Shown: positions 819-42,400 of the stretch, one piece after another | Layout of the letters: each line of letters starts with the position of its first letter | Position numbering within the stretch: position 1 is the first letter of the stretch | Source of the DNA: Macrostomum lignano | Taxonomy: Eukaryota | Direction of reading: 5' to 3' | Assembly: GCA_002269645.1 (NCBI GenBank) | Contig: NIVC01003103.1 | Location: forward strand, 1 to 64,000 | Length of the DNA: 64,000 nucleotides | The notes under the pieces: generated by a model | The model's input: the letters and a program-made list of their open reading frames with translations, nothing else | Databases searched by the model: none | What the model was told of the DNA's origin: nothing | Program-made: the position numbers and the translations under genes

Positions 819-3005
819 TCAGAACAGGTAGCCAGCCTCTTCGGTTGCCATGGCACCCCGCAGCGTCTTCTCCCGCAGTTTGGTCTGCAGCAGGATGTGC
901 TGAAGGACCCCGGCCCGGATGTCCATCTCCTTGAGCTCGTTCTTCAACCGCTGCAGGGCCTTCTTGATTCGCATCAGCGGCGAGCCGTCCGTCATTGAGT
1001 TTCCGCGCTCCTCCATCTCGGATTTCACTCGCTCCAGCTCCTCGGAGATCTCCTGCAGCTGCCGGCCGCGGTCGTTGATGCCCCGGAGGCCTGCTTGTAG
1101 CGCTCGCGGGCCTCGGCCAGGCGGTCCTGCGCGGCCCGGAGCTCCCTTAGCGCGCCTTCCACCTGGCTGTTGAGATACTTCTCTCTGCTGCCCAGCTTCT
1201 CCAGACTGCGTCCGATGTCCTCCTCCATGCGCTTCAGCTGCTGCTGGACCTGGCATCGAGGAGTGAGCGTTGCGGATTCAGAGATGGGGGGTCACAGATG
1301 GGGGAGTCATAGATGGAGGAGTCAGCGGTTGAGAAGTCAGCGATTGAGGAGTCAGCGATTGGGGTGTCAGTGATGGGAGAGTCAGGGAGGTAGGCACGGA
1401 GGGCAGTGAAGGTCAAGGAGACCAAGAGCGCCAGTGAGTCAATGGAGTCAGATGTGGCCATGAAGATGACAAAACGACGCGGTGGAACAGAAGAACAGCA
1501 GAGGGGGAGAGCGGGGCGGAGGCAGACAGGCCACCAACCTGTCCATAGCAGTCTCCGATAGCCTTCTGATACTGGTGCATGGAGTCCAGGTGCACCCGCC
1601 AGTCCTTGCCCTCGGCGCGCAGAACAACTTTGAGCTGCGGCTGCACCCGCTCCACCTCCAGCATCCATTCGGTGGAGTCGGTGTTGGACTCCAGGATCAC
1701 CTCCGGCTTCAGCACGGCGTCGCCCTGGGAGCCTCCGGCGGCCGCGGACGCTGCGGCGGCCATCTTGGCCAGGCCGTCCACGTCCGGCACGTTGTCCTCA
1801 TCCTCGATGAAGTCGTCGTCGGAGAACTCGTCGGCCACGCCGCCCTGGTCGTCCAGAGTCTTCACCGCCGACTCCGACTCGTCCTCGATGACATCGACGT
1901 GGTCCTCGCCGGCGTCAGTCGGGTAGCGCGGCTTGTCGAACACGAACCGGCGCACCTGCGACAGGTGGGTGGGTGGGGTTGGAAACTCTGCAGCCGGATC
2001 TACCGACAGAAAGACTGAAAAGCTGTTAGGCATGAAATTTCTGAATGAAAGGAAGTTCCTTCTGTCTGAAGTTCGAAGCTTGGCTCAATGCTTCTAAGGT
2101 GTATAAATAAGCGATAGCTGCTGTTTTTCTCCGCACATAGTTTAGCTAGAGAGAGAATCGCTGGCTACCCTGCAGAATGTAACCTCGTTTTACATTTTTG
2201 TAAGTCAAGAAAATATTAAGTGTTATTAAAAATACTAATTGCAGGTTTGTAGGCCCCAGACGCAACGCCTTCGACGACACCGTCCCACAGCTAGCGAGCG
2301 GTGAGGCAATTCTGCCCATTGCTCAACTCCCTCATGGGTGTAAATCTTTTCGTGCACACAAGCCCCAAATTAATGCGACCGCGCACGAAACTAGGGGTCC
2401 CGGCGCCAGAATCAAACGCGTTGATTGTTATATCTGATAGATTTAGTTATCGATTTATTTCACGCTATAAAAGATCACGCTCACCTGAAGAGCCTCCTCT
2501 GAGAGCTTGAGCAGCACGTACACCACCTGCGGTCCCGAGCCGGACTTCAGCTTGCTCGGCGGAAAGTCGATGCTGTGCCCAAGACTGCGCACGGCGTCCA
2601 GAATGCCGCTGACGATGGCGTTGGGGTCGTCGTACTCCTGCGGCTCCTCCATGTCTTTGCCGCCCATCCGGACCAGCCAGGAGGCCAGGCAGCCGAAGGC
2701 GTGGAACTGCTCGCCCGAGTTGGTTGCCATGGCGAAGTAGTGCCGCGAGATGGGTTTGTGGTGCAGCTGCCTGTTTATAAAAATCAGGGGTGACTTGTAG
2801 TGAAATTGCTGCTAAATTCAATTGAAAAATGCTCATGGACTCAGATATGAACTGCAGTCTGGCTCCAATATGGCTGTTTTTTTGCTTACTTGCAATATTC
2901 CCTGTCATAGTCCAATAGCTTTAGGTTGTCAAGCACTGCTTCCATGTTGAGGAAGACCTGGTAGGCGGCTCCAGGCCCATCTTCAATCTCATCTTCTGTG
3001 GCCAT
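819..3005 (-). CDS. IFT57: Intraflagellar transport protein 57 (4 coding exons; 1-nt frameshift in the last exon as assembled)
   Basis: Exons 3005-2890, 2770-2485, 1955-1539 and 1249-819, all with GT-AG junctions. They give MATEDEIEDGPGAAYQVFLNME..., GEQFHAFGCLASWL...PQEYDDPNAIVSGIL...DFPPSKLKSG, EWMLEVERVQPQLKV...DWRVHL and MEERGNSMTDGSPL...EMDIRAGVLQH, all recognisable IFT57 motifs. The last exon is 431 nt, one base short of frame, at a G run near 1081-1084. Confidence 0.95.
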
Positions 3006-6000: not shown

Positions 6001-6650
6001 CTCAGCAACAGCTAACCCCCCCCCCAACTCACGCTGTCACACGGGCACAACAGTTAAGCAATGTCTTTAATTCTAGTCTCAGTATCGTGTGTAGGAACCA
6101 CGAGCATGCAAAAGTGCCGTGACTCGTCGTGGGCTCGTGGCATCCTGATCACCAGCCGGTTGATGAACTCTTGGGGCAGCTGCTGCCAGACATTCAGCAC
6201 CGCCAGTCGCAACTGTTCAGCATTCTGTGGGGCATCCTGCTGAACTCTTCGCTTTACAAAGTCCCAGACATGCTCGATGGGGTTCATGTCTGGAGACTTT
6301 GACGGCCAGTTCAATGTGCGAATGCCGAGCTGCTCCTTCAGCAGCTGCACGTGTGCTGCTCGATGTGGCGCAGCGTTGTCGTCTTGAAGAATGCAGTTCT
6401 GCGGGCCGCCAAAGGTTGTCGTAGCAAATGGCAGAAACTGCTGCTGTAGCTGTAGCTCTGATGGTTTACCATTGCGCAATGCAGCCACCAGTGGGTTGAG
6501 TTGCGCCACACCCTCCCCAAATCCCCCATGCCGCACTTTGCGCTCGCGTCTGGCGGCGGCAGCCTTCACACATTTCTGAGTCACCGATGGCATACAAAAC
6601 TTTTGGGCCGTGTGACAGCGTGAGTTTGGGGGGGTTTAGCTGTTGCTGAG
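6001..6650 (-). mobile_element. Internally deleted Tc1 (DD34E) DNA transposon
   Basis: About 45-bp TIRs (ctcagcaacagctaa-polyC-aactcacgctgtcacacgg) at 6001 and 6650, flanked by TA (5999-6000, 6651-6652). ORF 6593-6054 contains QDDNAAPH...WPSKSPDMNPIEHVW, with 34 residues between D and E. No HTH domain or first catalytic D. Confidence 0.9.
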
Positions 6651-8766
6651 TATATATAAAATGCGTGTCCAGCGATTGTAAGAGTTCGCCCCATGTTGTT
6701 ACAGAAATAAAATAATTATAGTTTCGTTTCCTGTCCCGTTGCTTAAATCAAAGTCGTCCATGGCGCATGGAACTGAAAGTTTATAAGGAACAATGTAGCA
6801 TCTGACTCACCGAGGATTACCGTCTGTTTAGTGTTGCTTTGTGGGCGGCTGTAGGCTATAGGCCGCGTGCAATGTGTGCTAGGGGTTGCGGCTGACTTCG
6901 GTGTGGGGCGGGGGGTTGGCGGTTAGCTTTAAAACCCTTGACTTATGCTCCGTCAGTGGTCGCTCCTCTGTTCGTTCTCAGCCGAGAGCAAAGCAAGAAA
7001 GACCCCCGTAAGAAGCGCTCGTAAGTGCTTCTCGCCATCTTGCTTTACTACATTACATTGGAGTCTCTGCTGTGTCAGCCCCTAAAGTAGACAAAAGGAA
7101 CCACGCGCCCCGCTCGCTGCAGCGTAGCTTTTTCATTTACCGTGGCTGCTGGTTTTGATGACATCTCGAGCCACCGGATCGTCTGAAACTTTTTAATACC
7201 AGACTGCCAACATCCACAAAGAAGGCGTAGGTGAGTGCATGCCAGGACACCACACCTATGCTGTATTTTTATATAGAGCTGACTTTCTAGGAGTCCTAAT
7301 CTTGCGCACCTGCAGAATTCCTGTCCGGTCGGCAGGATAGATGGAATATGTGGACAGCTTGAACCTTGAGGTGAGATTATAGAAAAAGCATTGATTCGAT
7401 GTTCCTCTGTTCATTTACCCAACGCATCAGTCTGCTTAGCAATGAGTCTTTCATAAGGTCTTTTGATCTCTACATCATCCTGAGTAGTATTGGTATATAT
7501 TGAAGCTGACCATAACACACTCTTGGGCAGCCCAAGGTGTGTGGCAGATGTGGCAGTGGCACTGGCAGTTTCCAAACTATTCTGATTTTGTAAATAGCCC
7601 TATTTTCTAGGTAGCGATCTCAGCTACCCTTGAAAACCTTAAATTCCAATCATTAATAAAAACCCAACTACTTTGACAAATGGTAGTGCCACTGCCACTG
7701 CCACCACTAAGAACCTTAAATTCCAATCATTAAATAAAGAGTTATTTTTTGATGTGTCGAACATTTTCAGGGTCAAAAATTTTCATAGGGACTTTGGTAA
7801 CGTCACCTGACTCCTGACGCAGACTCACTGAAAAATTCTGGAGAGTTTTTCTATAACCTTAACCCCCCCTCTTGAAGCATGTTAATGAGTATCGATTATT
7901 TGTAAAACTCATTTTCAACGTGTAAAACTTTTCCAGGATTTTGTAAAACTCATTATCAGTGTGTAAAAAATATCGAAATAATTTCATAAAAATGGCAAAA
8001 TTTTTTTTTTTTAAATAAAAAAATTCTAAATATTCAAAATGACCGACTCTCTTGATACTATTTCTAGAGAATTGCCATTTCAGATAAAACCGAAGTCAAG
8101 TTATCCCCCCCCCCCCCTAGAAATTGATGATATTTGTGAGCTAAAAGAAGAATATGGAGAAATCGTAGTATCCATCGCCGAATATTTAAATGATGAAGAT
8201 TGGGAAGAGAGGAGTGTAGATTCAGAGCAGAACAATAGTGATTTTGAGAGTACTGAAGAGAATTGAAGAGGAGGCTGACTAATTCAGAACTTTCATACCC
8301 TGATTGTTCAGGGTTCAGGGTTCAGGGTTCAGGGTTCAGGGAAAAACCCGCATACAGTCTCCATTGTTCTCAGAAAAAGGGAACTTCCGCACAGCCTCTC
8401 AAAAGGGGAACTCCCCTATGAGTCATCCTAAAAGCTGCCAAATCATCGTTGTAAATATCCCATTGGTTGGCGTATGCAATTTGACACGTCGACTATCAGC
8501 TTATACAAAAGAGCTAGAACTACAGAAAACAGACATTCAATCCGCAACACTGACATTGAACGAGCTAGATCTTGTCACATTATTCATGTATGGCCCCAAT
8601 GTACATTTGAAAGGCTCTCAACTTCAACTTTCTGCACACCATTCAAGGTAGAGAGCAATGTTGAGAATACCGAGAAGAAAGAAATCCATATCGACACGAA
8701 AAGCAAAGTTAGCATCAATGAGTTCAGCTGTAAGTTCTCAATTTTCTTTTTTATCCTGCTTTACTT

Positions 8767-9312
8767 CCATGCACAGCCAGCCCAATGCAGTCACTGATCC
8801 CACAGCCAGCCCCATGCAGTCAATGATCCCACAGCCAGCCCCATGCAGTCAATGATCCCACAGCCAGCCCCATGCAGTCACTGATCCCACAGCCAGCCCC
8901 ATGCAGTCAATGATCCCACAGCCAGCCCCATGCAGTCAATGATCCCACAGCCAGCCCCATGCAGTCAATGATCCCACAGCCAGCCCCATGCAGTCACTGA
9001 TCCCACAGCCGGCCCCATGCAGTCACTGATCCCACAGTCAGCCCCATGCAGTCACTGATCCCACAGCCAGCCCGATGCAGTCACTGATCCCACAGCCAGC
9101 CCCATGCAGTCACTGATCCCACAGCCAGCCCTATGTAGTCACTGATCCCACAGCCAGCCCTATGTAGTCACTGATCCCACAGCCAGCCCCATGCAGTCAC
9201 TGATCCCACAGCCAGCCCCATGCAGTCACTGATCCCACAGCCAGCCCCATGCAGTCACTGATCCCACAGCCAGCCCCATGCAGTCACTGATCCCACAGCC
9301 AGCCCTATGTAG
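8767..9312. repeat. 29-bp minisatellite (cagccagccccatgcagtcactgatccca), ~19 copies
   Basis: Period of 29 read directly. Lies just upstream of the acceptor at 9424. Confidence 0.95.
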
Positions 9313-9424
9313 GCACCGCCCCAAAAAATGGAGGCGGTAACCCTGTAATCCTGGTCATGCAAGCAAGCATTAAATCGCATTTACAAACTACAAACAATAA
9401 ACAAACAACATTTTCTGCTTCCAG

Positions 9425-12400
9425 ACGAATCGCTGCCAGAGCTTCAGTGCCAGTTTTTGTGGCTGAGCGAGGAATTTATCAGCCCGGAGAAGTGCGCAGG
9501 CTATATTGAAACTGCCGAGGAGAAAATCAAATCCGACCCGCTCAACAGATCAGCATATCACACCATCATCGCTTATTTATACACGCGGCCGACCTTTAAA
9601 GTCGATTACAAAAAAGCAGAAGAACATCTGAAACTTGCTGAACAAATTTGTTCCAGAAGTCAAGAGAGTCCTTCAGAAACAGCTGCGTCCGCAGAGGAAG
9701 ATCAGTACGAAGGCATGCAAATTGACTGCGGCAGCAGCAGCGGCAGTGACACCTCAGCTGAAGTGAATCAACCGGTTGACGAAATTCTCGATTGCAAATT
9801 TATCGTTGATGCTCTGCGACTGTGGATCCGCCGGCAGCGCGGCTGTCCGATGAGGGAGTTGAGTGAAGAGTGGTTCGCGCTTCATCACAAGTGGACCGAT
9901 GCTATGAGGAGGGCTAGTGAAAAGAAGCAAGAAAGCTCAAAAGGAGCTCAAAAGACAGCGACTGAGGATGCAGAGTCCGAGCGAATGTTGGTCCACAGCT
10001 GGATTGTGGAGGCGCTGTCCTACCGCCATTTCGGTCGCAAATTTCTCCAGAAGGCTGCTGCTGTATGTAGAAAAGCAAATAAACTCACCGGAAACAAGAA
10101 TCTCTCCGCTCTGTTCGGCGAAGCCAACGCAGTGGCGATAATCAGGCGAGACACTCGCTTTATTATGAAGCCAAACCAGTACGAGATCCGCTTGTGGGCG
10201 CTGGCTTATGGACTTCGACCAGCTGATCCAGTCACCAGGTGCCACTTTCTAGCCAGCTGTGCCTTCGCTCTCATCAATTTCACTGCAGAGGAAAGCAATG
10301 GGAAAGAGGCCGAAAAAATCTGGGCAGAAATTCGCCGCGACGGAAAGCAGAAAACAGAGGATTCTCACTCCGGAATGGAAGATGATGATGAAAGTGAGGC
10401 TGGAGAATTTCAGAATCCCAAAACTGCAGGTCGTCCGCATCTTAGCTACCGACTGGCTAAAGAAGCCTTTTCTATGAAAGGCGAAGTCGATATCGAATCT
10501 GTGAAAAAGGCATTCGATCTCTGTCAAAGAGTATTTCGTAATCTTGGATTGACTGACAATGCAGATGAAGTGAAGGAAGCTCTGAAAGACGCAAGCAAAA
10601 ATTATTACATGGAAGCGGATCAGCTATTTACTGAGGCAAAAGAATTGAAAGGGGAAAAACGTCATGATGAAGCAAAAGAGAAATTTGCAGCCGCCAAAAG
10701 CAAATTGAAGGAATTGCCCGACGGGCAGAGAAATTGGATGTCGGAGTTTCTATTGATTAAAATCATTAACTTGGAAAGCAAAATTGATGGCGATGATAAT
10801 GCTGATTTCATCGAGCGGTTGTACGATGAAAGCGCAACGAGATTTAGCCAAAAAATATCTGTTATGGCTGAAGTTCTTGTTCGGAAAGGCCACTATCAAA
10901 TTTGCTTCGCCAAAAAGCCACTGGAAGGATGGCGGACACTTTACAGAGCGGTGGAACTTCACCCAGACTGCACTCATAAGTTTTACCCAATGGAGATTAA
11001 CTATATTGAATCGAAGGTCGCAGCTGCAAAAGATGAAAAAAATCTGGACGAGCTTCAACTTGCTTGGTTCTGGCAGACTTTTAGCATCAAGACCGACGAG
11101 AGTCTCGCATTCTGGTTCCTACACCACTCACCAAGACCAAATGAACCTAAGAAGAGAGTTGAGACCCTTTTCTGGCGAATTGAAACACCGAATTACTTAA
11201 GAAATAAAATAAATGACCGCAGTGACGAATGGAAATACTTCAAATCTCAGTTGAAACCTAAAGCTTTGATGCGAATTCGACAAGAATTTGAGAATGTCTA
11301 CGAAAAAGCTCTTTTGAATCCAGATGCCACTGAGTTCAGCGCAGAACACGGGCGATTTGCCCGCTTCCATCTGTGCAGGTCGCTGCTTGACCGCAAGACT
11401 GAAGTCCCTCACGACTCGAAACGGTATTTTCTTGACCTCGTGAATGAAAACGCTTCGCTGCCAGAGAAGCGCGTGAAGGCTGAGTGGATACTAACGCAGA
11501 TTTTGGGTCAAGAAAATGAGTTGAACATTGAAAACTTGCAGGAGTTCGTGTCTCTCGGCTGCAAGGACATTTTCCTAAAAATTCTCGACTACCTGATAAA
11601 GGGTAAGCCGAAATACCCGACCACGGAGCGGTACGAGACAGACGATCCGGAGCAGCTGGACTTCCGAGTCCCTTTCAGCACAGCTGCTTATGAGTTGTGC
11701 GCAAAGATGTTGAACTGCGCTGATTCTGAAGACAGCGGGTTTTACCTGCAGTCACTGCCCCTTGCTGTGGGTGAGGGGGGCAAGCAGCGAATCAAGTCTG
11801 ATGCAAAATTTGCCAGTTACTTGAAAAAGCAAATCGAAGAGTTTTTGGGCATAGAGCAGTCCAAGAGATCAGTTGACCGCGGCGTCGTTATGCGAGAAAT
11901 GCGGCTGAAACTGTCACGGAGGGCCCTCACTGCTGCGAGCAAGTCAGCAGAGAGCAGCAGCCAAACCGCTCAGTTTGAAATCGACTTATTGAAGAGGGCA
12001 AAGGAGCACTTGGACGGATTGGTTGAACTGCTGCCAACGGTAGATGGTAAAGATGCGACAGCAAACTATTTTCACGCCAGCAGAAACGATGGATTGAAAT
12101 TGACAAATGAAAACTGGACGGTACTTCAGACACCCAGCAGGCTGGAACCCGTGGTGGAGTGGATAGGAAAAGAAAAGCCTCTTGAAAGAAAACCCGAGTT
12201 CAGCCAAGAAGCCCGCGAAATTTCTCATGAAGAGGCAACTCAGCTGGCCAAAACACTCTTCACAAAGGGAAAGTCCCTTCAACAGAAGGCCAACATAAAG
12301 CTTACTGACGACATTTTGAGTTTCCTTGCACAACGCGAGGCGTTTACATGGCGCAAGCAAGGAGCCTGGCTGTTCCTTTGGACGCATTACGGCAACATGG

Positions 12401-12570
12401 TGCACAGGCGCAATCAGATGAAGGCAAGTGATTACCAAGAAGAAATCAAAACCAAACTGAAAAATCACGGAGGTCCTGATTCTATGTACCAGATGGCACA
12501 GTTCGCACTGGAGTTTGCCGAGGAAACTCAGTGGATTTTCGAAGATTGGATCAAGAAAAATAAAAATTGA
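9425..12570 (+). CDS. IFIT-like tetratricopeptide-repeat protein, ~1050 aa, one large exon; start exon unresolved
   Basis: Open frame from the acceptor ttttctgcttccag|ACGAA (phase 1). LPELQCQFLW resembles the IFIT signature LxxLECHFTW. YHTIIAYL...KAEEHLKLAEQI resembles YNLLAYV...ALECLEQAEEII, and EALSYRHFGRKFLQKAAAVCRKA resembles EKGWALLKFGGKYYQKAKAAFEKA. AATAAA follows the stop near 12637. Alignments are by eye, from memory of IFIT sequences. Confidence 0.75.
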
Positions 12571-12670
12571 TCACTAACTTGACAATGCGTTTCACGACTG
12601 CAGTTCGGACTGATTCAAAAAAGACGGTTATTAATTCAATAAATAAAATATGAGTTCTATTTGGCAGATT

Positions 12671-14395
12671 GTACTCTCTGCTGTTTCCCAATGTTTATTC
12701 AATACTGTGTACTCTGCTGTTTCCCAATGTTTATTCAATACTGTGTACTCTCTGCTGTTTCCCAATGTTTATTCAATACTGTGTACTCTCTGCTGTTTCC
12801 CAATGTTTATTCAATACTGTGTACTCTCTGCTAATTCCCAATGTTTATTCAATACTGTGTACTCTCTGCTGTTTCCCAATGTTTATTCAATACTGTGTAC
12901 TCTCTGCTGTTTCCTAATGTTTATTCAATACTGTGTACTCTGCTGTTTCCCAATGTTTATTCAATACTGTGTACTCTCTGCTGTTTCCCAATGTTTATTC
13001 AATACTGTGTACTCTGCTGTTTCCCAATGTTTATTCAATACTGTGTACTCTCTGCTATTTCCCTATGTTTATTCAATACTGTGTTTGCTCTGCTGTTTCC
13101 CAATGTTTATTCAATACTGTGTACTCTGCTGTTTCCCAATGTTTATTCAATACTGTGTACTCTCTGCTGTTTCCCAATGTTTATTCAATACTGTGTACTC
13201 TGCTGTTTCCCAATGTTTATTCAATACTGTGTACTCTCTGCTATTTCCCTATGTTTATTCAATACTGTGTTTGCTCTGCTGTTTCCCAATGTTTATTCAA
13301 TACTGTGTACTCTCTGCTGTTTCCCAATGCTTATTCAATACTGTGTACTCTCTGCTGTTTCCCAATGCTTATTCAATACTGTGTACTCTCTGCTGTTTCC
13401 CAATGTTTATTCAATACTGTGTTTGCTCTGCTACTTCCCAATGTTTATTCAATACTGTGTACTCTCTGCTACTTCCCAATGTTTATTCAATACTGTGTTT
13501 GCTCTGCTACTTCCCAATGTTTATTCAATACTGTGTAGGCTCTGCTATTTCCCAATGTTTATTCAATACTGTGTTTGCTCTGCTGTTTCCTAATGTTTAT
13601 TCAATACTGTGTTTGCTCTGCTGTTTCCTAATGTTTATTCAATACTGTGTTTGCTCTGCTAATTCCCAATGTTTATTCAATACTGTGTTTGCTCTGCTGT
13701 TTCCTAATGTTTATTCAATACTGTGTTTGCTCTGCTAATTCCCAATGTTTATTCAATACTGTGTTTGCTCTGCTGTTTCCTAATGTTTATTCAATACTGT
13801 GTAGGCTCTGCTATTTCCTAATGTTTATTCAATACTGTGTACTCTCTGCTATTTCCCTATGTTTATTCAATACTGTGTACTCTCTGCTATTTCCCTATGT
13901 TTATTCAATACTGTGTTTGCTCTGCTGTTTCCCAATGTTTATTCAATACTGTGTAGGCTCTGCTAATTCCCAATGTTTATTCAATACTGTGTTTGCTCTG
14001 CTATTTCCTAATGTTTATTCAATACTGTGTTTGCTCTGCTAATTCCCAATGTTTATTCAATACTGTGTAGGCTCTGCTAATTCCCAATGTTTATTCAATA
14101 CTGTGTTTGCTCTGCTATTTCCTAATGTTTATTCAATACTGTGTACTCTCTGCTATTTCCCTATGTTTATTCAATACTGTGTTTGCTCTGCTATTTCCTA
14201 ATGTTTATTCAATACTGTGTACTCTCTGCTATTTCCCTATGTTTATTCAATACTGTGTTTGCTCTGCTATTTCCTAATGTTTATTCAATACTGTGTACTC
14301 TCTGCTATTTCCCTATGTTTATTCAATACTGTGTTTGCTCTGCTAATTCCCAATGTTTATTCAATACTGTGTAGGCTCTGCTAATTCCCAATGTT
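12671..14395. repeat. 36/38-bp minisatellite (ctctctgctgtttcccaatgtttattcaatactgtgta), ~46 copies
   Basis: Direct periodicity. Begins about 100 nt after the IFIT-like stop codon. Confidence 0.95.
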
Positions 14396-14803
14396 AAAGT
14401 AGAGTGTACGCTGTACTATTATGCTCACTCGCCGCTAATATTAACTTTATTATATATCAGTTTTTTTCTGGTATTCAAACAGGGTTTTTGAGCCAATAGG
14501 TTGAAATGAGTCCGAAATTCACAACTTTGAACTGGACTCTATTCATGACAATTACCTTACGGATGTTGAGTATAAAACACAGAGTATCGCATTTGAATTT
14601 CGTAGATCGATTGATATTGATATATTGATAAAACATTGAGCCAAAAACCCTGCTTTGAACATTTCCATCTCGCTAGTGTCAGCGTCCTGATGAACCGCAA
14701 CTTCTAGTGGCCATTGCCTGGATAAGTCTAAATAATAATTGCAACGAGAAAACGGAGCATATCTTTATTGTAATTCGTCCTATTTACACGTATGTTTTTT
14801 TGA

Positions 14804-16555
14804 GTGTGAGCCTAAAACTCAATAACAGCAGCCTGTGTCTGAGTGTGAGCCTACTCAATAACACCAGCCTGTGTCTGAGTGTGAGCCTACTCAATAACAC
14901 CAGCCTGTGTCTCTGAGTGTGAGCCTACTCAATAACACCAGCCTGTGTCTCTGAGTGTGAGCCTACTCAATAACAGCAGCCTGTGTCTGAGTGTGAGCCT
15001 ACTCAATAACAGCAGCCTGTGTCTCTGAGTGTGAGCCTACTCAATAACAGCAGCCTGTGTCTGAGTGTGAGCCTACTCAATAACAGCAGCCTGTGTCTCT
15101 GAGTGTGAGCCTACTCAATAACAGCAGCCTGTGTCTGAGTGTGAGCCTACTCAATAACACCAGCCTGTGTCTCTGAGTGTGAGCCTACTCAATAACACCA
15201 GCCTGTGTCTGAGTGTGAGCCTACTCAATAACAGCAGCCTGTGTCTGAGTGTGAGCCTACTCAATAACAGCAGCCTGTGTCTGAGTGTGAGCCTACTCAA
15301 TAACAGCAGCCTGTGTCTCTGAGTGTGAGCCTACTCAATAACAGCAGCCTGTGTCTGAGTGTGAGCCTACTCAATAACACCAGCCTGTGTCTCTGAGTGT
15401 GAGCCTACTCAATAACAGCAGCCTGTGTCTGAGTGTGAGCCTACTCAATAACACCAGCCTGTGTCTCTGAGTGTGAGCCTACTCAATAACAGCAGCCTGT
15501 GTCTCTGAGTGTGAGCCTACTCAATAACACCAGCCTGTGTCTCTGAGTGTGAGCCTACTCAATAACAGCAGCCTGTGTCTGAGTGTGAGCCTACTCAATA
15601 ACAGCAGCCTGTGTCTGAGTGTGAGCCTACTCAATAACACCAGCCTGTGTCTGAGTGTGAGCCTACTCAATAACAGCAGCCTGTGTCTGAGTGTGAGCCT
15701 ACTCAATAACAGCAGCCTGTGTCTCTGAGTGTGAGCCTACTCAATAACAGCAGCCTGTGTCTGAGTGTGAGCCTACTCAATAACACCAGCCTGTGTCTCT
15801 GAGTGTGAGCCTACTCAATAACAGCAGCCTGTGTCTCTGAGTGATCCTACTCAATAACAGCAGCCTGTGTCTCTGAGTGTGAGCCTACTCAATAACAGCA
15901 GCCTGTGTCTCTGAGTGTGAGCCTACTCAATAACACCAGCCTGTGTCTCTGAGTGTGAGCCTACTCAATAACAGCAGCCTGTGTCTGAGTGTGAGCCTAC
16001 TCAATAACAGCAGCCTGTGTCTGAGTGTGAGCCTACTCAATAACAGCAGCCTGTGTCTCTGAGTGTGAGCCTACTCAATAACAGCAGCCTGTGTCTCTGA
16101 GTGATCCTACTCAATAACACCAGCCTGTGTCTCTGAGTGTGAGCCTACTCAATAACAGCAGCCTGTGTCTGAGTGTGAGCCTACTCAATAACAGCAGCCT
16201 GTGTCTCTGAGTGTGAGCCTACTCAATAACAGCAGCCTGTGTCTGAGTGTGAGCCTACTCAATAACAGCAGCCTGTGTCTCTGAGTGTGAGCCTACTCAA
16301 TAACAGCAGCCTGTGTCTGAGTGTGAGCCTACTCAATAACACCAGCCTGTGTCTCTGAGTGTGAGCCTACTCAATAACACCAGCCTGTGTCTGAGTGTGA
16401 GCCTACTCAATAACAGCAGCCTGTGTCTGAGTGATCCTACTCAATAACAGCAGCCTGTCTCTGAGTGATCCTACTCAATAACACCAGCCTGTGTCTCTGA
16501 GTGATCCTACTCAATAACACCAGCCAGTGTCTGAGTGTGAGCCTACTCAATAGCA
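14804..16555. repeat. 36/38-bp minisatellite (gagtgtgagcctactcaataacagcagcctgtgtct[ct]), ~47 copies
   Basis: Direct periodicity with a CT-dinucleotide length polymorphism. Confidence 0.95.
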
Positions 16556-17004
16556 GCAAAATAATGATTAAAACGAGGACTCAAGGCTACAAGCAGCCTC
16601 CAATTCGAATAGATAAAATTGAAGCACAGGCGTCAGTTTCAAACCGGTTTCATAGAAAATATAAGGTTATTTATCGGGGCAGCGAATCATTTACCGATCA
16701 ATGCAGCTTGCACAGTCAGACAGTAAAAGTACATAAAATAGAAGTACAGATATACATAATATTGACAACAGTGCACCGAGTGCAGAGCAGCCAATGGAGA
16801 ACCGGATTTGAGCTGTGAAAGACCCGCAGAGAAAGGGTGAAGGGGGCGGTTCAAGAGGGCGTGAATGGCGGCCGAAGACAGATTGAGAAATGACAGCAGA
16901 GAGTACACCAGTACACAGGGATGCGGGATGACATTTTACAGAATGAGAGCCTCTTGATTCAGCGGGGGTTCATCGCAGACTTTCAGCAGAGCGAAGTCGG
17001 CTTG

Positions 17005-26651: not shown

Positions 26652-28890
26652 GAGGAGCTGCGAAATACACGATGCCATCTCCATTCTTAATCGGAGCTGC
26701 GGAAACCACACGATGCCATCTCCCTTTTTAAATCGGAGCTGTGGAAACCACACGATGCCATCTCCCTTTTTAAATCAGAGCTGTGGAAACCAAAAGATGC
26801 CATCTCCCTTTTTAAATCAGAGCTGTGGAAACCACACGATGCCATCTCCCTTCTAAATCGGAGCTGCGGAAACCACACGATGCCATCTCCATTCTAATTC
26901 GAAGCTGCGGAAACCACACGATGCCATCTCCCTTTTTAAATCAGAGCTGTGGAAACCACACGATGCCATCTCCCTTTTTAAATCAGAGCTGTGGAAACCA
27001 AAAGATGCCATCTCCCTTCTAAATCGGAGCTGCGGAAACCACACGATGCCATCTCCATTCTAAATCGGAGCTGCGGAAACCACACGATGCCATCTCCCTT
27101 TTTAAATCAGAGCTGTGGAAACCACACGATGCCATCTCCCTTTTTAAATCAGAGCTGTGGAAACCACAAGATGCCATCTCCCTTTTTAAATCGGAGCTGT
27201 GGAAACCACACGATGCCATCTCCCTTCTAAATCGGAGCTGCGGAAACCACACGATGCCATCTCCATTCTAATTCGAAGCTGCGGAAACCACACGATGCCA
27301 TCTCCCTTTTTAAATCGGAGCTGTGGAAACCACACGATGCCATCTCCCTTTTTAAATCGGAGCTGTGGAAACCACACGATGCCATCTCCCTTTTTAAATC
27401 AGAGCTGTGGAAACCAAAAGATGCCATCTCCCTTCTAAATCGGAGCTGCGGAAACCACACGATGCCATCTCCATTCTAAATCGGAGCTGCGGAAACCACA
27501 CGATGCCATCTCCCTTTTTAAATCAGAGCTGTGGAAACCACACGATGCCATCTCCCTTTTTAAATCAGAGCTGTGGAAACCACAAGATGCCATCTCCCTT
27601 TTTAAATCGGAGCTGTGGAAACCACACGATGCCATCTCCCTTCTAAATCGGAGCTGCGGAAACCACACGATGCCATCTCCATTCTAATTCGAAGCTGCGG
27701 AAACCACACGATGCCATCTCCCTTTTTAAATCGGAGCTGTGGAAACCACACGATGCCATCTCCCTTTTTAAATCAGAGCTGTGGAAACCACACGATGCCA
27801 TCTCCCTTCTAAATCGGAGCTGCGGAAACCACACGATGCCATCTCCCTTTTTAAATCAGAGCTGTGGAAACCAAAAGATGCCATCTCCCTTTTTAAATCA
27901 GAGCTGTGGAAACCACACGATGCCATCTCCCTTTTTAAATCAGAGCTGTGGAAACCACACGATGCCATCTCCCTTTTTAAATCAGAGCTGTGGAAACCAC
28001 ACGATGCCATCTCCCTTTTTAAATCAGAGCTGTGGAAACCACACGATGCCATCTCCCTTTTTAAATCAGAGCTGTGGAAACCAAAAGATGCCATCTCCCT
28101 TCTAAATTGGAGCTGCGGAAACCACACGATGCCATCTCCATTCTAAATCGGAGCTGCGGAAACCACACGATGCCATCTCCCTTTTTAAATCAGAGCTGTG
28201 GAAACCACACGATGCCATCTCCCTTTTTAAATCAGAGCTGTGGAAACCACAAGATGCCATCTCCCTTTTTAAATCGGAGCTGTGGAAACCACACGATGCC
28301 ATCTCCCTTCTAAATCGGAGCTGCGGAAACCACACGATGCCATCTCCATTCTAATTCGAAGCTGCGGAAACCACACGATGCCATCTCCCTTTTTAAATCG
28401 GAGCTGTGGAAACCACACGATGCCATCTCCCTTTTTAAATCAGAGCTGTGGAAACCACACGATGCCATCTCCCTTCTAAATCGGAGCTGCGGAAACCACA
28501 CGATGCCATCTCCCTTTTTAAATCAGAGCTGTGGAAACCAAAAGATGCCATCTCCCTTTTTGAATCAGAGCTGTGGAAACCACACGATGCCATCTCCCTT
28601 TTAAATCAGAGCTGTGGAAACCAAAAGATGCCATCTCCCTTTTTAAATCAGAGCTGTGGAAACCAAAAGATGCCATCTCCCTTGTAAATCGGAGCTGCGG
28701 AAACCACACGATGCCATCTCCATTCTAAATCGGAGCTGCGGAAACCACACGATGCCATCTCCCTTTTTAAATCGGAGCTGTGGAAACCACACGATGCCAT
28801 CTCCCTTCTAAATCGGAGCTGCGGAAACCACACGATGCCATCTCCCTTCTAAATCGGAGCTGCGGAAACCACACGATGCCACCTCCCTTC
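26652..28890. repeat. 41/42-bp minisatellite (ggagctgtggaaaccacacgatgccatctccctttttaaatc), ~53 copies, with multi-unit duplications
   Basis: Direct periodicity. Rare variants recur at 416-nt and 667-nt spacing. Confidence 0.95.
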
Positions 28891-36458: not shown

Positions 36459-39400
36459 ATGATTGCACAGCTTCTGCTGCTCTCGCTGGCCGCCTGTGGC
36501 TCCGCGCAGCTCCACTTAGGCTCGTGTGAGTTCTCACCCCACCCCCATCTCATATGAGTTGTAATGGGCTGTCATTCCTGCCCACTGAGTCCTGCCCACT
36601 GATTCCTGCACACTGAGTCCTGCACACTGATTCCTGCACACTGATTCCTGCACACTGATTCCTGCACACTGATTCCTGCACACTGATTCCTGCACACTGA
36701 TTCCTGCACACTGATTCCTGCACACTGATTCCTGCACACTGATTCCTGCACACTGATTCCTGCACACTGATTCCTGCACACTGATTCCTGCACACTGATT
36801 CCTGCACACTGATTCCTGCACACTGATTCCTGCACACTGATTCCTGCACACTGATTCCTGCCCACTGAGTCCTGCCCACTGAGTCCTGCCCACTGAATCC
36901 TGAACACTGAATCCTGCACACTGAATCCTGCACACTGATTCCTGCACACTGATTCCTGCCCACTGATTCCTGCACACTGATTCCTGCCCACTGATTCCTG
37001 CACACTGATTCCTGCCCACTGATTCCTGCACACTGATTCCTGCCCACTGATTCCTGCACACTGATTCCTGCACACTGATTCCTGCCCACTGATTCCTGCA
37101 CACTGAGTCCTGCACACTGATTCCTGCACACTGAGTCCTGCACACTGATTCCTGCCCACTGATTCCTGCACACTGAGTCCTGCCCACTGAGTCCTGCACA
37201 CTGAGTCCTGCCCACTGAGTCCTGCCCACTGAATCCTGCACACTGAGTCCTGCACACTGAGTCCTGCACACTGATTCCTGCACACTGATTCCTGCCCACT
37301 GATTCCTGCACACTGATTCCTGCCCACTGATTCCTGCACACTGAGTCCTGCCCACTGATTCCTGCACACTGATTCCTGCCCACTGATTCCTGCACATTGA
37401 GTCCTGCCCACTAATTCCTGCACACTGATTCCTGCCCACTAATTCCTGCACACTGATTCCTGCCCACTGATTCCTGCACACTGATTCCTGCCCACTGATT
37501 CCTGCCCACTGATTCCTGCACACTGATTCCTGCCCACTGATTCCTGCACACTGATTCCTGCACACTGAGTCCTGCACACTGATTCCTGCACACTGAGTCC
37601 TGCACACTGATTCCTGCACACTGATTCCTGCACACTGAGTCCTGCACACTGATTCCTGCACATTGAGTCCTTCCCACTGATTCCTGCACACTGATTCCTG
37701 CCCACTGATTCCTGCACATTGAGTCCTGCCCACTGATTCCTGCACACTGATTCCTGCACAGTTTTAATTTCCGCATGTGTGTAGATCGTATCAAGGACGG
37801 CTGAAGTAATCTCTATTAAGTAGTCCTTGGCTCGTATACGGAGTGGGAATCGCTCATTCAGTCAGTGGGAATCGCTCATTCAGTCAGTGGGAATCGCTCA
37901 TTCAGTCAGTGGGAATCGCTTAAGCTGAAAACAGCCAGCAGTTCTGCTAAATGAAGTCTCGGGCGTGCGTGTGAGAGTTGGGAGCTGCACTGAAACCAGA
38001 CAGGTCTCTCGTGTTGCTGGGAAAGGAAAAGATTAGGTCCAAGCAGAATGCCAATGAAAAAGATGTTGCAGGGGTGCTGCTAATGAGCTTTGACTCCTCC
38101 TGGCACTCAAAAGAGTTTCAAGAGAATGGGAATTCAGTCTGCCAAGAGAGCCTGCGGTCACAGAACCGGTCATGCGGCTAGCAATGGAGGAGGCGGCTGG
38201 CTCGCCTTATTTTGCGGGTGAATCTTGGCTCCCGCTTGCCTCAGGCCTGTCTTGTGGAATTCTAAGAATTCAAAGTTCTTGAACTATGGAATTCTTGATT
38301 GCCTCATTTTTGGACCTTCACCGGAACCAGATGAGGCGTTCAGGACATTTTGTTTGCATCCCGGAACCGGATAAACCGGAACCGGATAAACCGGAACCGG
38401 ATAAACCGGAACCGGATAAACCGGAACCGGATAAACCGGAACCGGATAAACCGGAACCGGATAAACCGGAACCGGATAAACCGGAACCGGATAAACCGGA
38501 ACCGGATAAACCGGAACCGGATAAACCGGAACCGGATAAACCGGAACCGGATAAACCGGAACCGGATAAACCGGAACCGGATAAACCGGAACCGGATAAA
38601 CCGGAACCGGATAAACCGGAACCGGATAAACCGGAACCGGATAAACCGGAACCGGATAAACCGGAACCGGATAAACCGGAACCGGATAAACCGGAACCGG
38701 ATAAACCGGAACCGGATAAACCGGAACCGGATAAACCGGAACCGGATAAACCGGAACCGGATAAACCGGAACCGGATAAACCGGAACCGGATAAACCGGA
38801 ACCGGATAAACCGGAACCGGATAAACCGGAACCGGATAAACCGGAACCGGATAAACCGGAACCGGATAAACCGGAACCGGATAAACCGGAACCGGATAAA
38901 CCGGAACCGGATAAACCGGAACCGGATAAACCGGAACCGGATAAACCGGAACCGGATAAACCGGAACCGGATAAACCGGAACCGGATAAACCGGAAGGCC
39001 AAGAGTCGGCAGCAACCCCAATTTCCGTCCCGCAGCCACCGGGTTCAGCGTCGGTGAGCTGGAGGAATCCGCGGACGGTTCGAACTTCGCCAACCTGAGC
39101 CGCCTGCCGGCCCGCTCGGACATCGAGTGCGCCACACTGGCCGCCGCGACGCCCGCCGCCACCGCCATCCGCTACCTGCCTCAGGAGGGCGCCTGCCTGC
39201 TGCTGAAGACTGGCGGAAGCTCTGGAACGGAGCAGCAGCTGCCCGCCTCCGACCAGCCTGTGCTGCGGAAGGAGTGGAACATTCCAGGTGTGTATTTTTT
39301 ATCTTATCTGCCGATTTCCTTACGCTACGTATTGTTTTCATGAGTAGAGAGACAAGAGTTCAAAGACAAGGTCTACTACTGAAAGTATAAAGCGGTTTCC

Positions 39401-42400
39401 ATCTCTCTGCAAATCGGCTTCCATCTCTCTGAACAATCGGCTTCCATCTCTCTGCACAATCGGCTTCCATCTCTCTGCACAATCGGCTTCCATCTCTCTG
39501 CACAATCGGCTTCCATCTCTCTGCACAATCGGCTTCCATCTCTCTGCACAATCGGCTTCCATCTCTGCATAATCGGCTTCCATCTCTCTGCAAATCGGCT
39601 TCCATCTCTCTGCACAATCAGCTTCCATCTCTATGAACAATCGGCTTCCATCTCTCTGCAAATCGGCTTCCATCTCTCTGCACAATCGGCTTCCATCTCT
39701 CTGCACAATCGGCTTCCATCTCTCTGCAAATCGGCTTCCATCTCTCTGCAAATCGGCTTCCATCTCTCTGCACAATCGGCTTCCATCTCTCTGCAAATCG
39801 GCTTCCATCTCTCTGCAAATCGGCTTCCATCTCTCTGCAAATCGGCTTCCATCTCTCTGCACAATCGGCTTCCATCTCTCTGCACAATCGGCTTCCATCT
39901 CTCAGCACAATCGGCTTCCATCTCTCTGCACAATCGGCTTCCATCTCTGCACAATCGGCTTCCATCTCTCTGCACAATCGGCTTCCATCTCTCTGCAAAT
40001 CGGCTTCCATCTCTCTGAACAATCGGCTTCCATCTCTCTGCAAATCGGCTTCCATCTCTCTGCACAATCGGCTTCCATCTCTCTGCACAATCGGCTTCCA
40101 TCTCTCTGCACAATCGGCTTCCATCTCTCTGCACAATCGGCTTCCATCTCTCTGCACAATCGGCTTCCATCTCTCTGCAAATCGGCTTCCATCTCTCTGA
40201 ACAATCGGCTTCCATCTCTCTGCAAATCGGCTTCCATCTCTCTGCACAATCGGCTTCCATCTCTCTGCACAATCGGCTTCCATCTCTCTGCAAATCGGCT
40301 TCCATCTCTCTGAACAATCGGCTTCCATCTCTCTGCAAATCGGCTTCCATCTCTCTGCACAATCGGCTTCCATCTCTCTGCACAATCGGCTTCCATCTCT
40401 CTGCAAATCGGCTTCCATCTCTCTGCACAATCGGCTTCCATCTCTCTGCAAATCGGCTTCCATCTCTCTGCACAATCGGCTTCCATCTCTCTGCACAATC
40501 GGCTTCCATCTCTCTGCACAATCGGCTTCCATCTCTGCACAATCGGCTTCCATCTCTCTGCACAATCGGCTTCCATCTCTCTGCACAATCGGCTTCCATC
40601 TCTCTGCACAATCGGCTTCCATCTCTCTGCACAATCGGCTTCCATCTCTCTGCAAATCGGCTTCCATCTCTCTGCACAATCGGCTTCCATCTCTCTGCAA
40701 ATCGGCTTCCATCTCTCTGCACAATCGGCTTCCATCTCTCTGCACAATCGGCTTCCATCTCTCTGCAAATCGGCTTCCATCTCTCTGCAAATCGGCTTCC
40801 ATCTCTCTGCACAATCGGCTTCCATCTCTCTGCAAATCGGCTTCCATCTCTCTGCAAATCGGCTTCCATCTCTCTGCAAATCGGCTTCCATCTCTCTGCA
40901 CAATCGGCTTCCATCTCTCTGCACAATCGGCTTCCATCTCTCTGCAAATCGGCTTCCATCTCTCTGCACAATCGGCTTCCATCTCTGCACAATCGGCTTC
41001 CATCTCTCTGCACAATCGGCTTCCATCTCTCTGCAAATCGGCTTCCATCTCTCTGAACAATCGGCTTCCATCTCTCTGCAAATCGGCTTCCATCTCTCTG
41101 CACAATCGGCTTCCATCTCTCTGCACAATCGGCTTCCATCTCTCTGCACAATCGGCTTCCATCTCTCTGCACAATCGGCTTCCATCTCTCTGCAAATCGG
41201 CTTCCATCTCTCTGCAAATCGGCTTCCATCTCTCTGAACAATCGGCTTCCATCTCTCTGCAAATCGGCTTCCATCTCTCTGCACAATCGGCTTCCATCTC
41301 TCTGCACAATCGGCTTCCATCTCTCTGCAAATCGGCTTCCATCTCTCTGAACAATCGGCTTCCATCTCTCTGCAAATCGGCTTCCATCTCTCTGCACAAT
41401 CGGCTTCCATCTCTCTGCACAATCGGCTTCCATCTCTCTGCAAATCGGCTTCCATCTCTCTGCACAATCGGCTTCCATCTCTCTGCAAATCGGCTTCCAT
41501 CTCTCTGCACAATCGGCTTCCATCTCTCTGCACAATCGGCTTCCATCTCTCTGCAAATCGGCTTCCATCTCTCTGCACAATCGGCTTCCATCTCTCTGCA
41601 CAATCGGCTTCCATCTCTGCACAATCGGCTTCCATCTCTCTGCACAATCGGCTTCCATCTCTCTGCACAATCGGCTTCCATCTCTCTGCACAATCGGCTT
41701 CCATCTCTCTGCACAATCGGCTTCCATCTCTCTGCAAATCGGCTTCCATCTCTCTGCACAATCGGCTTCCATCTCTCTGCACAATCGGCTTCCATCTCTC
41801 TGCAAATCGGCTTCCATCTCTCTGCACAATCGGCTTCCATCTCTCTGCACAATCGGCTTCCATCTCTGCACAATCGGCTTCCATCTCTCTGCACAATCGG
41901 CTTCCATCTCTCTGCAAATCGGCTTCCATCTCTCTGCAAATCGGCTTCCATCTCTCTGCAAATCGGCTTCCATCTCTCTGCACAATCGGCTTCCATCTCT
42001 CTGCAAATCGGCTTCCATCTCTCTGCAAATCGGCTTCCATCTCTCTGCAAATCGGCTTCCATCTCTCTGCACAATCGGCTTCCATCTCTCTGCACAATCG
42101 GCTTCCATCTCTCTGCACAATCGGCTTCCATCTCTCTGCACAATCGGCTTCCATCTCTGCACAATCGGCTTCCATCTCTCAGCACAATCGGCTTCCATCT
42201 CTCTGCACAATCGGCTTCCATCTCTCTGCACAATCGGCTTCCATCTCTCTGCACAATCGGCTTCCATCTCTCTGCACAATCGGCTTCCATCTCTCTGCAA
42301 ATCGGCTTCCATCTCTCTGCACAATCGGCTTCCATCTCTCTGCACAATCGGCTTCCATCTCTGCATAATCGGCTTCCATCTCTCTGCAAATCGGCTTCCA

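What the first reader, a model, noticed from the sequence alone, without database searches (positions are those of the whole stretch)
9425..12570. IFIT-like TPR protein about twice vertebrate length in an invertebrate
Four N-terminal blocks align by eye with vertebrate IFIT1/5, including the LxxLxCxFxW signature and FGxKxxQKAxA..xKA. As in vertebrate IFITs, the coding region sits in one big exon, unlike the intron-rich neighbours. IFITs are known as interferon-induced 5'-end RNA binders. If this is a flatworm, there is no interferon system and many mRNAs carry trimethyl-capped spliced leaders, so the ligand is an open question. About 550 extra C-terminal residues have no domain I recognise and could be an effector module.
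Basis: partly seen in the sequence, partly recalled or inferred. Interest (0 to 1): 0.7.

Follow-up and report, generated by a model that had tools for sequence, protein, structure and literature searches.

The report
Flatworm IFIT-like TPR gene, double length
This flatworm (Macrostomum lignano) gene encodes a 1085-residue helical protein whose front end is a distant but real relative of the vertebrate antiviral IFIT proteins, joined to a conserved tail domain of unknown fold; it matters because IFITs are described in the literature as an invention of jawed vertebrates.

Summary
Window 9425-12570 (+) is the large last exon of M. lignano gene Mlig010163g1 (PAA53315.1, 1085 aa). Two small 5' coding exons lie at 7341-7370 and 8648-8729.

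On its own, the window protein does not match IFITs significantly (BLASTP E 0.43; hhalign E 0.07; no Pfam TPR hit). It does belong to a Macrostomum multigene family of at least five loci. Several paralogs start with the exact IFIT signature L..LECHFTW. The family profile's best match in the PDB is IFIT5 (E 3.9e-7, residues 13-198). hhalign against IFIT1/2/5 gives 96% probability and E 1e-9, while reversed-sequence controls score E 0.08-0.27.

IFIT homology of the first 190 or so residues is therefore well supported. It weakens to E 5e-4 once the motif is removed and to generic TPR similarity beyond about residue 280.

The IFIT5 triphosphate-pocket residues are not conserved, so RNA 5'-end binding is unproven. 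A family-specific helical domain of about 360 aa (aa 678-1040) has no detectable relative; structure models were too poor to use.

Older paralogs show purifying selection. The window copy against its homeolog shows dN/dS 0.89.

Verdict: a new variant of a known kind, of moderate interest.

The parts
7341..7370 (+). Coding exon 1 (MEYVDSLNLE), followed by the donor GTGAGA
   Evidence: The spliced model translates exactly to P0005/PAA53315.1.
8648..8729 (+). Coding exon 2 (VESNVENTEKKEIHIDTKSKVSINEFS plus 1 nt), with acceptor caAG and donor GTAAGT. This N-terminal extension is absent from the paralogs.
   Evidence: Paralog N-termini are shown.
8772..9316 (.). 29-bp minisatellite (18.8 copies) that fills most of intron 2
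9425..12570 (+). Coding exon 3: 1047 codons plus the TGA stop (12568-12570). This is the feature the finding describes.
9430..9663 (+). IFIT-like subdomain I (exon aa 2-79), carrying the degenerate signature LPELQCQFLW at 9433-9462. It aligns to IFIT residues 12-85.
   Evidence: hhalign with the window protein as master: probability 92.7%, E 4.3e-7. BLASTP against paralog P0002: 40% identity, E 7e-11.
9664..9768 (+). Acidic, Ser-rich insertion (about aa 80-114), absent from the paralogs and from IFITs and predicted non-helical
   Evidence: Alignments; DSSP of the model
9769..10161 (+). Continuation of the IFIT-like region (about aa 115-245). It includes FGRKFLQKAAAVCRKA (10030-10077) and the conserved R240/D241, equivalent to IFIT5 R186/D188.
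   Evidence: The family profile aligns to IFIT5 13-198.
10162..11457 (+). Central all-helical, TPR-like region (about aa 246-677) with lineage-specific insertions. In the paralogs this region gives Pfam TPR hits and matches LapB and consensus TPR structures. It is only weakly collinear with IFIT residues 200-413.
   Evidence: There is no Pfam TPR hit in the window protein itself.
11458..12546 (+). Family-specific conserved C-terminal helical domain (aa 678-1040). Its motifs are GC[KR]D, YELCA, DRGxxMR, KE.LD, Y.HA, RE...W...W..N and AEFAEET. It has no detectable relative outside Macrostomum.
   Evidence: Invariant columns. Searches. AF2 pLDDT 44.8; Foldseek found nothing.
12638..12643 (+). AATAAA polyadenylation signal about 70 nt after the stop codon
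   Evidence: Read directly from the sequence
12670..14395 (.). 38-bp minisatellite (45.7 copies) just 3' of the gene. The long ORFs inside it are artefacts of the repeat.

Best explanation
The window holds M. lignano gene Mlig010163g1. It has three coding exons and encodes a 1085-aa all-helical cytoplasmic protein. This protein is the most divergent known member of a Macrostomum multigene family.

The family shares ancestry with vertebrate IFITs over the N-terminal subdomain (helix alpha1, the CHFTW loop, helix alpha2 and the first TPRs, roughly IFIT residues 11-190, possibly to about 280). It continues as a TPR-like solenoid stretched by insertions, and ends in a conserved helical domain of about 360 aa that is specific to the family.

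Shown: gene structure, family membership, IFIT-specific homology of the N-terminal part, TPR nature of the centre, long-term purifying selection in the family, and absence of known relatives for the C-terminal domain.

Inferred: the protein works as a TPR clamp or scaffold that holds a ligand (an RNA end or a protein) in its N-terminal half. The conserved C-terminal domain mediates assembly or a downstream effect. The IFIT1/5 triphosphate and cap-contact residues are replaced, so the ligand or the way it is bound probably differs from vertebrate IFITs. The clustered, fast-diverging, partly pseudogenised family fits a defence-type role, but that role is not shown.
For: Gene model: the spliced translation equals PAA53315.1.

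Family: the only relatives among 1.84 billion representative proteins are M. lignano proteins. Against P0002, BLASTP gives E 1e-16 for the C-terminal part and E 7e-11 for the N-terminal part. Further copies were found by tblastn, including three within 20 kb on one contig.

IFIT link:
- P0002, P0004 and the L003 copy begin with L..LECHFTW. The literature describes this pentapeptide as invariant in all IFITs (PMC11462223).
- P0002 against human IFIT5 by BLASTP: E 7e-7 over residues 7-188 and 13-188.
- The family profile's top PDB hit is IFIT5, at E 8.5e-5 and then E 3.9e-7 with more paralogs. The next-best hits are generic TPR proteins, in a different region.
- hhalign against IFIT1/2/5: probability 95.6-96.4%, E 1e-8 to 1e-9. 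Reversed controls score 20-24 (E 0.08-0.27). With the motif removed the result is still E 5e-4 and collinear.

TPR centre: Pfam TPR_2 at E 7e-10 in P0002, plus LapB and consensus TPR hits.

Constraint: between older paralogs pS is about 0.8 (saturated) against pN 0.26-0.36, and the C-terminal domain has omega 0.18-0.34.
Against: The window protein alone is not significantly IFIT-like, has no Pfam TPR hit, and carries CQFLW rather than CHFTW.

Similarity beyond IFIT residue 200 or so is near the null (E 0.017-0.03).

IFIT5 pocket residues E33, T37, Q41, K150, R253 and Q288 are not conserved.

Both AF2 models are unreliable (pLDDT 39 and 45) and Foldseek returned nothing, so neither the fold nor a pocket is confirmed.

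Against its 98%-identical homeolog the window copy shows dN/dS 0.89, and the exon is more diverged than the flanking DNA. This could mean relaxed constraint on this copy.

No ISRE or NF-kB motif lies upstream. No expression or binding data exist.
Confidence: 0.7

Rival explanations
1. It is a functional IFIT analogue. The TPR clamp binds the 5' ends of non-self RNA (triphosphate or unmethylated cap) and spares the worm's own mRNAs, for example those with trimethylguanosine-capped spliced leaders. The C-terminal domain acts as an effector, in an interferon-independent antiviral pathway.
For: Homology to the RNA-binding IFITs. R240 is conserved opposite IFIT5 R186. Paralog P0002 has a C-terminal RGG-type repeat tail, which is typical of RNA-binding proteins. 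The family is clustered, expanding and partly decaying, like immune gene families. The window copy evolves at or above the neutral rate.
Against: Six of the seven mapped triphosphate-pocket residues are replaced in all or most paralogs. No model exists in which to look for a basic channel. There are no ISRE-like promoter elements and no induction or binding data. IFIT2 and IFIT3 show that IFIT-fold proteins can work mainly through protein contacts or other RNA-binding modes (established knowledge, not tested here).
Confidence: 0.2
2. It is an ordinary TPR scaffold protein. The IFIT-like start is convergent or a chance resemblance and does not reflect common descent.
For: The window protein alone gives only non-significant matches. 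Generic TPR proteins also hit the family profile at E of about 1e-3 and a consensus TPR at E 2e-7. No intermediate sequences from other phyla were found.
Against: The match is to the non-TPR N-terminal part specific to IFITs, is collinear over about 180 residues, and ranks first in the whole PDB. Three paralogs have the exact CHFTW motif at the same distance from the N-terminus. Significance survives removal of the motif (E 5e-4), and reversed controls fail.
Confidence: 0.1
3. The window copy is a redundant homeolog that is losing function after the recent genome duplication of M. lignano. The family is real, but this copy is drifting.
For: dN/dS is 0.89 against the homeolog on NIVC01000735.1 (Sd 12, Nd 41). 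The exon is 1.56% diverged against about 0.8% for the flanking non-coding DNA. The motif is degenerate (CQFLW) and the protein has lost recognisable Pfam TPRs. A third copy (g2) is annotated as partial, with a frameshifted end.
Against: Both copies keep open frames of 1047-1050 codons. All three internal indels are in frame, and the only frame-shifting one changes the last residues. The invariant C-terminal motifs of the family are intact in the window protein. The counts are too small to tell 0.89 from either 0.5 or 1.3.
Confidence: 0.15

Closest known systems
Vertebrate IFIT proteins (IFIT1, IFIT2, IFIT3, IFIT5; PDB 3ZGQ/4HOQ, 5UDI, 4G1T)
   Same: The N-terminal signature L..L.C(H)F(T)W sits at the same distance from the start. 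Blocks collinear with IFIT follow: AY, FG.K..(QKA).A, N...G.A...R.D. Both are all-helical with a TPR continuation. The coding sequence lies almost wholly in one exon. The genes occur in small clusters with lineage-specific duplication and decay.
   Different: The flatworm protein is 1085 aa against about 480. It has large acidic insertions and an extra conserved C-terminal domain of about 360 aa. The triphosphate and cap-contact residues are not conserved. CHFTW is degenerate in the window copy. The window gene has two extra 5' mini-exons and a phase-1 intron three codons before the motif, instead of an exon 1 of ATG plus 2 nt. No ISRE was found, and the host is not known to have an interferon system (background knowledge, not tested here). 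Published surveys report IFITs only from jawed vertebrates (PMC3688568).
Generic TPR scaffolds (LapB, consensus TPR, OGT-type TPR arrays)
   Same: The central region of the family profile matches LapB and designed consensus TPR proteins at E 5e-4 to 1e-3. The paralogs pass Pfam TPR thresholds.
   Different: These matches cover only the central repeats. None covers the N-terminal 190 residues, where only IFITs match. The window protein itself passes no Pfam TPR model.
DUF1722 / YbgA (Pfam PF08349)
   Same: Paralog P0004 residues 649-734 score 29.2 bits (E 1.2e-6) against this model. The match centres on HAFGQFKKQL.
   Different: The match is not seen in the window protein or in P0002. A profile-profile comparison of the C-terminal domain with E. 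coli YbgA gives E 0.58. It is treated as a spurious local match.

Membership tests
IFIT | N-terminal alpha1-loop-alpha2 with the pentapeptide CHFTW, described as invariant in all IFITs (PMC11462223) | tested here: inconclusive
   The window protein has CQFLW, keeping 3 of 5 residues (C, F, W) along with the preceding L..L. Paralogs P0002, P0004 and the L003 copy have exact CHFTW, and a fourth has CHFLW. The feature is met by the family and degenerate in this member.
IFIT | Sequence or profile similarity to IFITs over subdomain I and the start of subdomain II that exceeds similarity to any other TPR family | tested here: met
   The family profile's top PDB hit is IFIT5 at E 3.9e-7 (residues 13-198); other TPR proteins score E 5e-4 or worse, in a different region. 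hhalign gives E 1e-9 and 96% probability, with reversed controls at E 0.08-0.27. The window protein alone gives E 0.07.
IFIT | Collinear similarity through subdomains II-III to the C-terminus (IFIT residues about 200-480) | tested here: inconclusive
   Secondary hhalign alignments are collinear but near the null (E 0.017-0.03). The four best BLASTP segments of the window protein against IFIT5 are collinear, but each has E of about 0.5.
IFIT | Conserved RNA 5'-end pocket residues (IFIT5 E33, T37, Q41, K150, Y250, R253, Q288; list recalled from the IFIT5 structure papers) | tested here: not met
   Mapping through the hhalign and family alignments, in the order P0002/P0004/window: E33 to S/N/K, T37 to V/V/Y, Q41 to K/T/T, K150 to C/C/H, R253 to K/S/gap, Q288 to Q/Q/L. 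Only R186 is conserved in all. The mapping beyond residue 200 or so is low-confidence.
IFIT | Protein of about 450-500 aa made only of TPR-like helices | tested here: not met
   The protein is 1085 aa, with insertions and an extra conserved C-terminal domain that shows no similarity to IFIT (hhalign score 17, E 0.25).
IFIT | Two-exon gene in which exon 1 carries ATG plus 2 nt and exon 2 carries the rest (PMC3688568) | tested here: not met
   The window gene has three coding exons. The last intron is phase 1 and lies three codons before the motif. Paralog P0004 has no intron in its coding sequence. The shared trait is only that nearly the whole coding sequence lies in one exon.
IFIT | Induction by interferon or virus through ISRE promoter elements | tested here: not met
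   No GAAANNGAAAS motif was found in the 800 bp upstream of five paralogs. Induction itself cannot be tested with these tools.
IFIT | Clamp-shaped TPR superhelix with a positively charged central channel | not testable with these tools
   The AF2 models have pLDDT 39.4 (full length, single sequence) and 44.8 (C-terminal 448 aa, 4 sequences). Foldseek found no hit at E of 1e-3 or better.
TPR repeat proteins (Pfam clan TPR) | At least one repeat passing a Pfam TPR model | tested here: inconclusive
   The window protein has no TPR hit even at E up to 10. Paralogs pass: P0002 hits TPR_2 at E 7e-10, and P0004 hits TPR_1 at E 1.4e-6.

The most novel reading that the evidence does not exclude
IFIT-type proteins predate both vertebrates and interferon. 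In this reading a bilaterian ancestor already had a CHFTW-type TPR clamp. Macrostomum kept it, expanded it, and fused it to a new effector or assembly domain, so that it serves as an interferon-independent sensor or restrictor of foreign RNA. One possibility is that it tells trimethylguanosine-capped, spliced-leader self mRNAs apart from viral or transposon RNAs.
Probability: 0.15. Interest if true: 0.85.

Novelty: new variant of a known kind. Interest (0 to 1): 0.55.

Why it matters
The published survey of IFIT evolution places the origin of the family in jawed vertebrates, together with interferon, and found no counterpart in lancelet, sea squirt, acorn worm or sea urchin (PMC3688568). A later paper states that the family has not been reported from lower animals (PMC11462223).

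A flatworm family with the exact CHFTW start and statistically supported homology over about 190 residues would push the origin of the IFIT fold back to early bilaterians, or else require a transfer event. It would also separate the fold from interferon control.

The fusion to a conserved, otherwise unknown 360-aa domain offers a way to learn what an IFIT-type clamp can be coupled to. M. lignano supports RNAi and transgenesis, so the question can be tested directly.

Tried and rejected
- Pfam scan of the window protein: nothing significant and no TPR.
- phmmer of the window protein against PDB sequences: only a chance FF-domain match.
- Exhaustive phmmer against 1.84 billion representative proteins: only M. 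lignano paralogs.
- Word-indexed search with a family alignment: returned only the protein itself, so that search was wasted.
- AF2, single sequence, full length: pLDDT 39. AF2 of the C-terminal 448 aa with a 4-sequence alignment: pLDDT 45. Foldseek of both against the PDB found no hit at E 1e-3 or better, and the listed hits are meaningless.
- DUF1722 lead for the C-terminal domain: rejected after a profile comparison with E. coli YbgA gave E 0.58.
- HEPN-like R-x4-6-H motif in the C-terminal domain: considered by eye and rejected, because there is no conserved Arg-His pair at that spacing (alignment).
- The UniProt name 'Suf domain-containing protein': not reproduced by Pfam.
- ISRE, NF-kB and STAT motifs and shared 8-mers upstream of five paralogs: nothing beyond chance.
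- Literature searches for IFIT in flatworms, molluscs or cnidarians, and for the locus tags: only IFITM or irrelevant hits.
- I recall that automated RefSeq annotation lists 'IFIT-like' proteins in some invertebrates.
Full report
**What is at the coordinates.** The frame starting at 9427 is open to the TGA at 12568-12570. It begins directly after a canonical acceptor (ttctgcttccag|AC) at 9424/9425. A near-identical database protein identified the organism as Macrostomum lignano.

Mapping that protein back onto the window located two small upstream coding exons. Reading their splice sites gave this model: exon 1 at 7341-7370, exon 2 at 8648-8729, exon 3 at 9425-12570. Its translation is identical to GenBank PAA53315.1 (BOX15_Mlig010163g1, 1085 aa).

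An AATAAA follows about 70 nt after the stop codon. A 29-bp minisatellite fills intron 2 and a 38-bp one starts 100 nt after the stop. So 1047 of 1085 codons are in one exon.

**Does the window protein itself look like an IFIT?** Not by the statistics.
- Pfam finds no TPR or any other significant domain.
- phmmer against all PDB sequences finds no IFIT.
- BLASTP against human IFIT5 gives a best E of 0.43.
- hhalign of the single sequence against an IFIT1/2/5 profile gives E 0.07. IFIT1 and IFIT2 were verified.

LPELQCQFLW lies opposite LLELECHFTW, and FGRKFLQKAAAVCRKA opposite FGGKYYQKAKAAFEKA. The four best BLASTP segments are collinear along IFIT5. That was a lead, not proof.

**The paralogs settle it.** An exhaustive phmmer search of 1.84 billion representative proteins found only three matching clusters: the window protein's own cluster and two others, both M. 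lignano. A further word-indexed search added P0004.
- P0002 (1062 aa) starts MSNLEKLEELECHFTW.
- P0004 (921 aa, intronless coding sequence) starts MVETLDQLECHFTW.

The window protein matches P0002 at both ends: N-terminal 80 residues at 40% identity, E 7e-11; C-terminal 410 residues at E 1e-16.

tblastn on the fetched contigs showed more copies. There is a second full-length copy and a truncated one within 20 kb of P0004. There is also a full-length copy, broken into three frames, at the locus of the fragment P0003. These start LPSLECHFLW and LDQLECHFTW.

CHFTW is described as invariant in all IFITs and lies in the loop between the two non-TPR N-terminal helices (PMC11462223).

**Statistics of the IFIT link.**
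- P0002 against IFIT5 by BLASTP: E 7e-7 over residues 7-188 and 13-188.
- A 4-sequence family profile searched against all PDB sequences put IFIT5 first at E 8.5e-5.
- An 8-row profile with the extra paralogs put IFIT5 first at E 3.9e-7 (profile 5-196 against IFIT5 13-198), with the IFIT1 N-terminal fragment at E 0.024. LapB and consensus TPR proteins matched a different, central region at E 5e-4 to 1e-3.
- hhalign against the IFIT1/2/5 alignment gave probability 95.6-96.4% and E 1e-8 to 1e-9 with P0002 as master. With the window protein as master it gave 92.7% and E 4.3e-7.

Controls:

| Comparison | Score | E |
|---|---|---|
| Native | 75.3 | 1.1e-8 |
| Reversed IFIT | 19.9 | 0.23 |
| Reversed family | 23.8 | 0.078 |
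| First ~25-30 residues (the motif) removed from both | 39.8 | 5e-4, still collinear |
| From residue ~90 on | 34.0 | 0.0026 |
| From residue ~200 on | 26.9 | 0.017 |
| C-terminal domain against IFIT | 17.1 | 0.25 |

Homology is therefore well supported for IFIT residues 11-190, plausible to about 280, and undecided beyond that.

**Architecture of the window protein** (numbering from the start of exon 3):
- aa 2-79: IFIT-like subdomain I.
- aa 80-114: acidic, Ser-rich insertion.
- aa 115-245: continuation of the IFIT-like region, with the FG.K block and R240/D241.
- aa 246-677: helical TPR-like region with further insertions. One of these carries a 12-aa length difference from the database copy P0001.
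- aa 678-1040: a domain conserved in all paralogs. Invariant motifs are GC[KR]D, YELCA, DRG..MR, Y.HA, RE...W...W..N and AEFAEET.

The last domain has no relative in Pfam, the PDB or the representative library. The extra length over IFITs comes from four sources: 38 N-terminal residues from the mini-exons, insertions, more repeats, and about 360 residues of new domain. It is not 550 residues of unknown tail.

**Function.** I mapped the IFIT5 residues that hold the 5' triphosphate and first nucleotides (list recalled from the IFIT5 structure papers) through the hhalign and family alignments. E33, T37, Q41, K150, R253 and Q288 are replaced in most or all flatworm proteins. R186 is kept in all of them. 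The structural signature residues (L16, C18, F20, W22, A58, Y59, F151, G152) are also kept. This argues for a shared fold but against the same ligand chemistry.

Neither AF2 model was usable and Foldseek gave nothing, so a basic channel could not be examined.

Indirect hints of an RNA or defence role are the RGG-type repeat tail of P0002 and the clustered, expanding and decaying family. No ISRE-like or NF-kB-like elements lie upstream.

**Selection.** Between older paralogs synonymous sites are saturated (pS about 0.8) while pN is 0.26-0.36. In the C-terminal domain omega is 0.18-0.34. The family is therefore under long-term purifying selection and is not junk.

The window copy and its homeolog on NIVC01000735.1 differ by 12 synonymous and 41 non-synonymous changes, giving dN/dS 0.89. 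By region this is 0.52 for the N-terminal part, 1.17 for the centre and 1.59 for the C-terminal domain, but the counts are small.

The exon is 1.56% diverged, against about 0.8% for 7 kb of flanking non-repeat DNA. Both copies keep the frame, and all three internal indels are in frame. This fits either relaxed constraint after the recent genome duplication or diversifying selection. The data cannot separate the two.

**Comparison with what is known.** The closest known family is IFIT. The protein fails several membership criteria: length and architecture, pocket residues, exon 1 structure, and ISRE. It passes the homology criterion for the N-terminal part. I therefore call it an IFIT-related family with a new architecture rather than an IFIT.

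The literature I could reach says that IFITs arose in jawed vertebrates (PMC3688568) and have not been reported from lower animals (PMC11462223). I found no paper on flatworm IFIT-like genes. I recall that automated RefSeq names of the 'IFIT-like' type exist for some invertebrates. I could not verify this here, and it tempers the novelty.

**Verdict.** This is a new variant of a known kind, and I score its interest at 0.55.

Noticed in passing
window 1-64000 (e.g. 39393-43024, 26654-28890, 48520-50745, 43611-45947, 14801-16558): About 21 kb (33%) of the window is minisatellite arrays with 14-42 bp units. The long ORFs inside them (12650-13738, 39631-43233, 36534-37745) are repeat artefacts and give spurious Pfam hits (BRCT_3, SPAM).
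   Followed up: partly
window 1413-2033 (-) and 6054-6593 (-): The upstream neighbours are an exon of an IFT57 (intraflagellar transport) gene (E 9e-24, covering only 125 of 360 profile positions, so the gene is split by introns) and a remnant of a DDE_3 transposase (E 3e-11).
   Followed up: no
L001 10001-13378 (P0002) and L002 10001-12766 (P0004): The paralogs carry different low-complexity C-terminal tails. P0002 has six GGSEHFRGRG (RGG-type) repeats and P0004 has GEATGVQA repeats. The window protein has no such tail.
   Followed up: no
L002 105-2728 (-), 10001-12766 (+), 18997-20029 (+), 16251-16997 (+): Three family copies lie within 20 kb on contig NIVC01000347.1: one intact, one split into two frames, one truncated and running into a simple repeat. 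A retroelement integrase gene lies between them. This looks like a birth-and-death gene cluster.
   Followed up: partly
L003 5918-8546 (+) versus L002 10001-12766: The copy at L003 is mosaic relative to P0004. Synonymous difference is 0.33 in the C-terminal half but 0.81 in the N-terminal part, which suggests recombination or gene conversion between paralogs. The L003 copy is broken into three reading frames, either as a pseudogene or through assembly indels.
   Followed up: partly
window 9425-12570 versus L005 5402-8549: The coding exon is more diverged from its homeolog (1.56%) than about 7 kb of flanking non-repeat DNA (about 0.8%). A one-base difference in the terminal A-run changes the last residues (KKNKN* against KKNKIDH*).
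   Followed up: yes
database names of P0001, P0004, P0008: Automatic names given to members or fragments of this family ('Suf domain-containing', 'DUF1722 domain-containing', 'BTB/POZ domain-containing') are inconsistent with each other. Pfam does not reproduce them for the window protein.
   Followed up: partly
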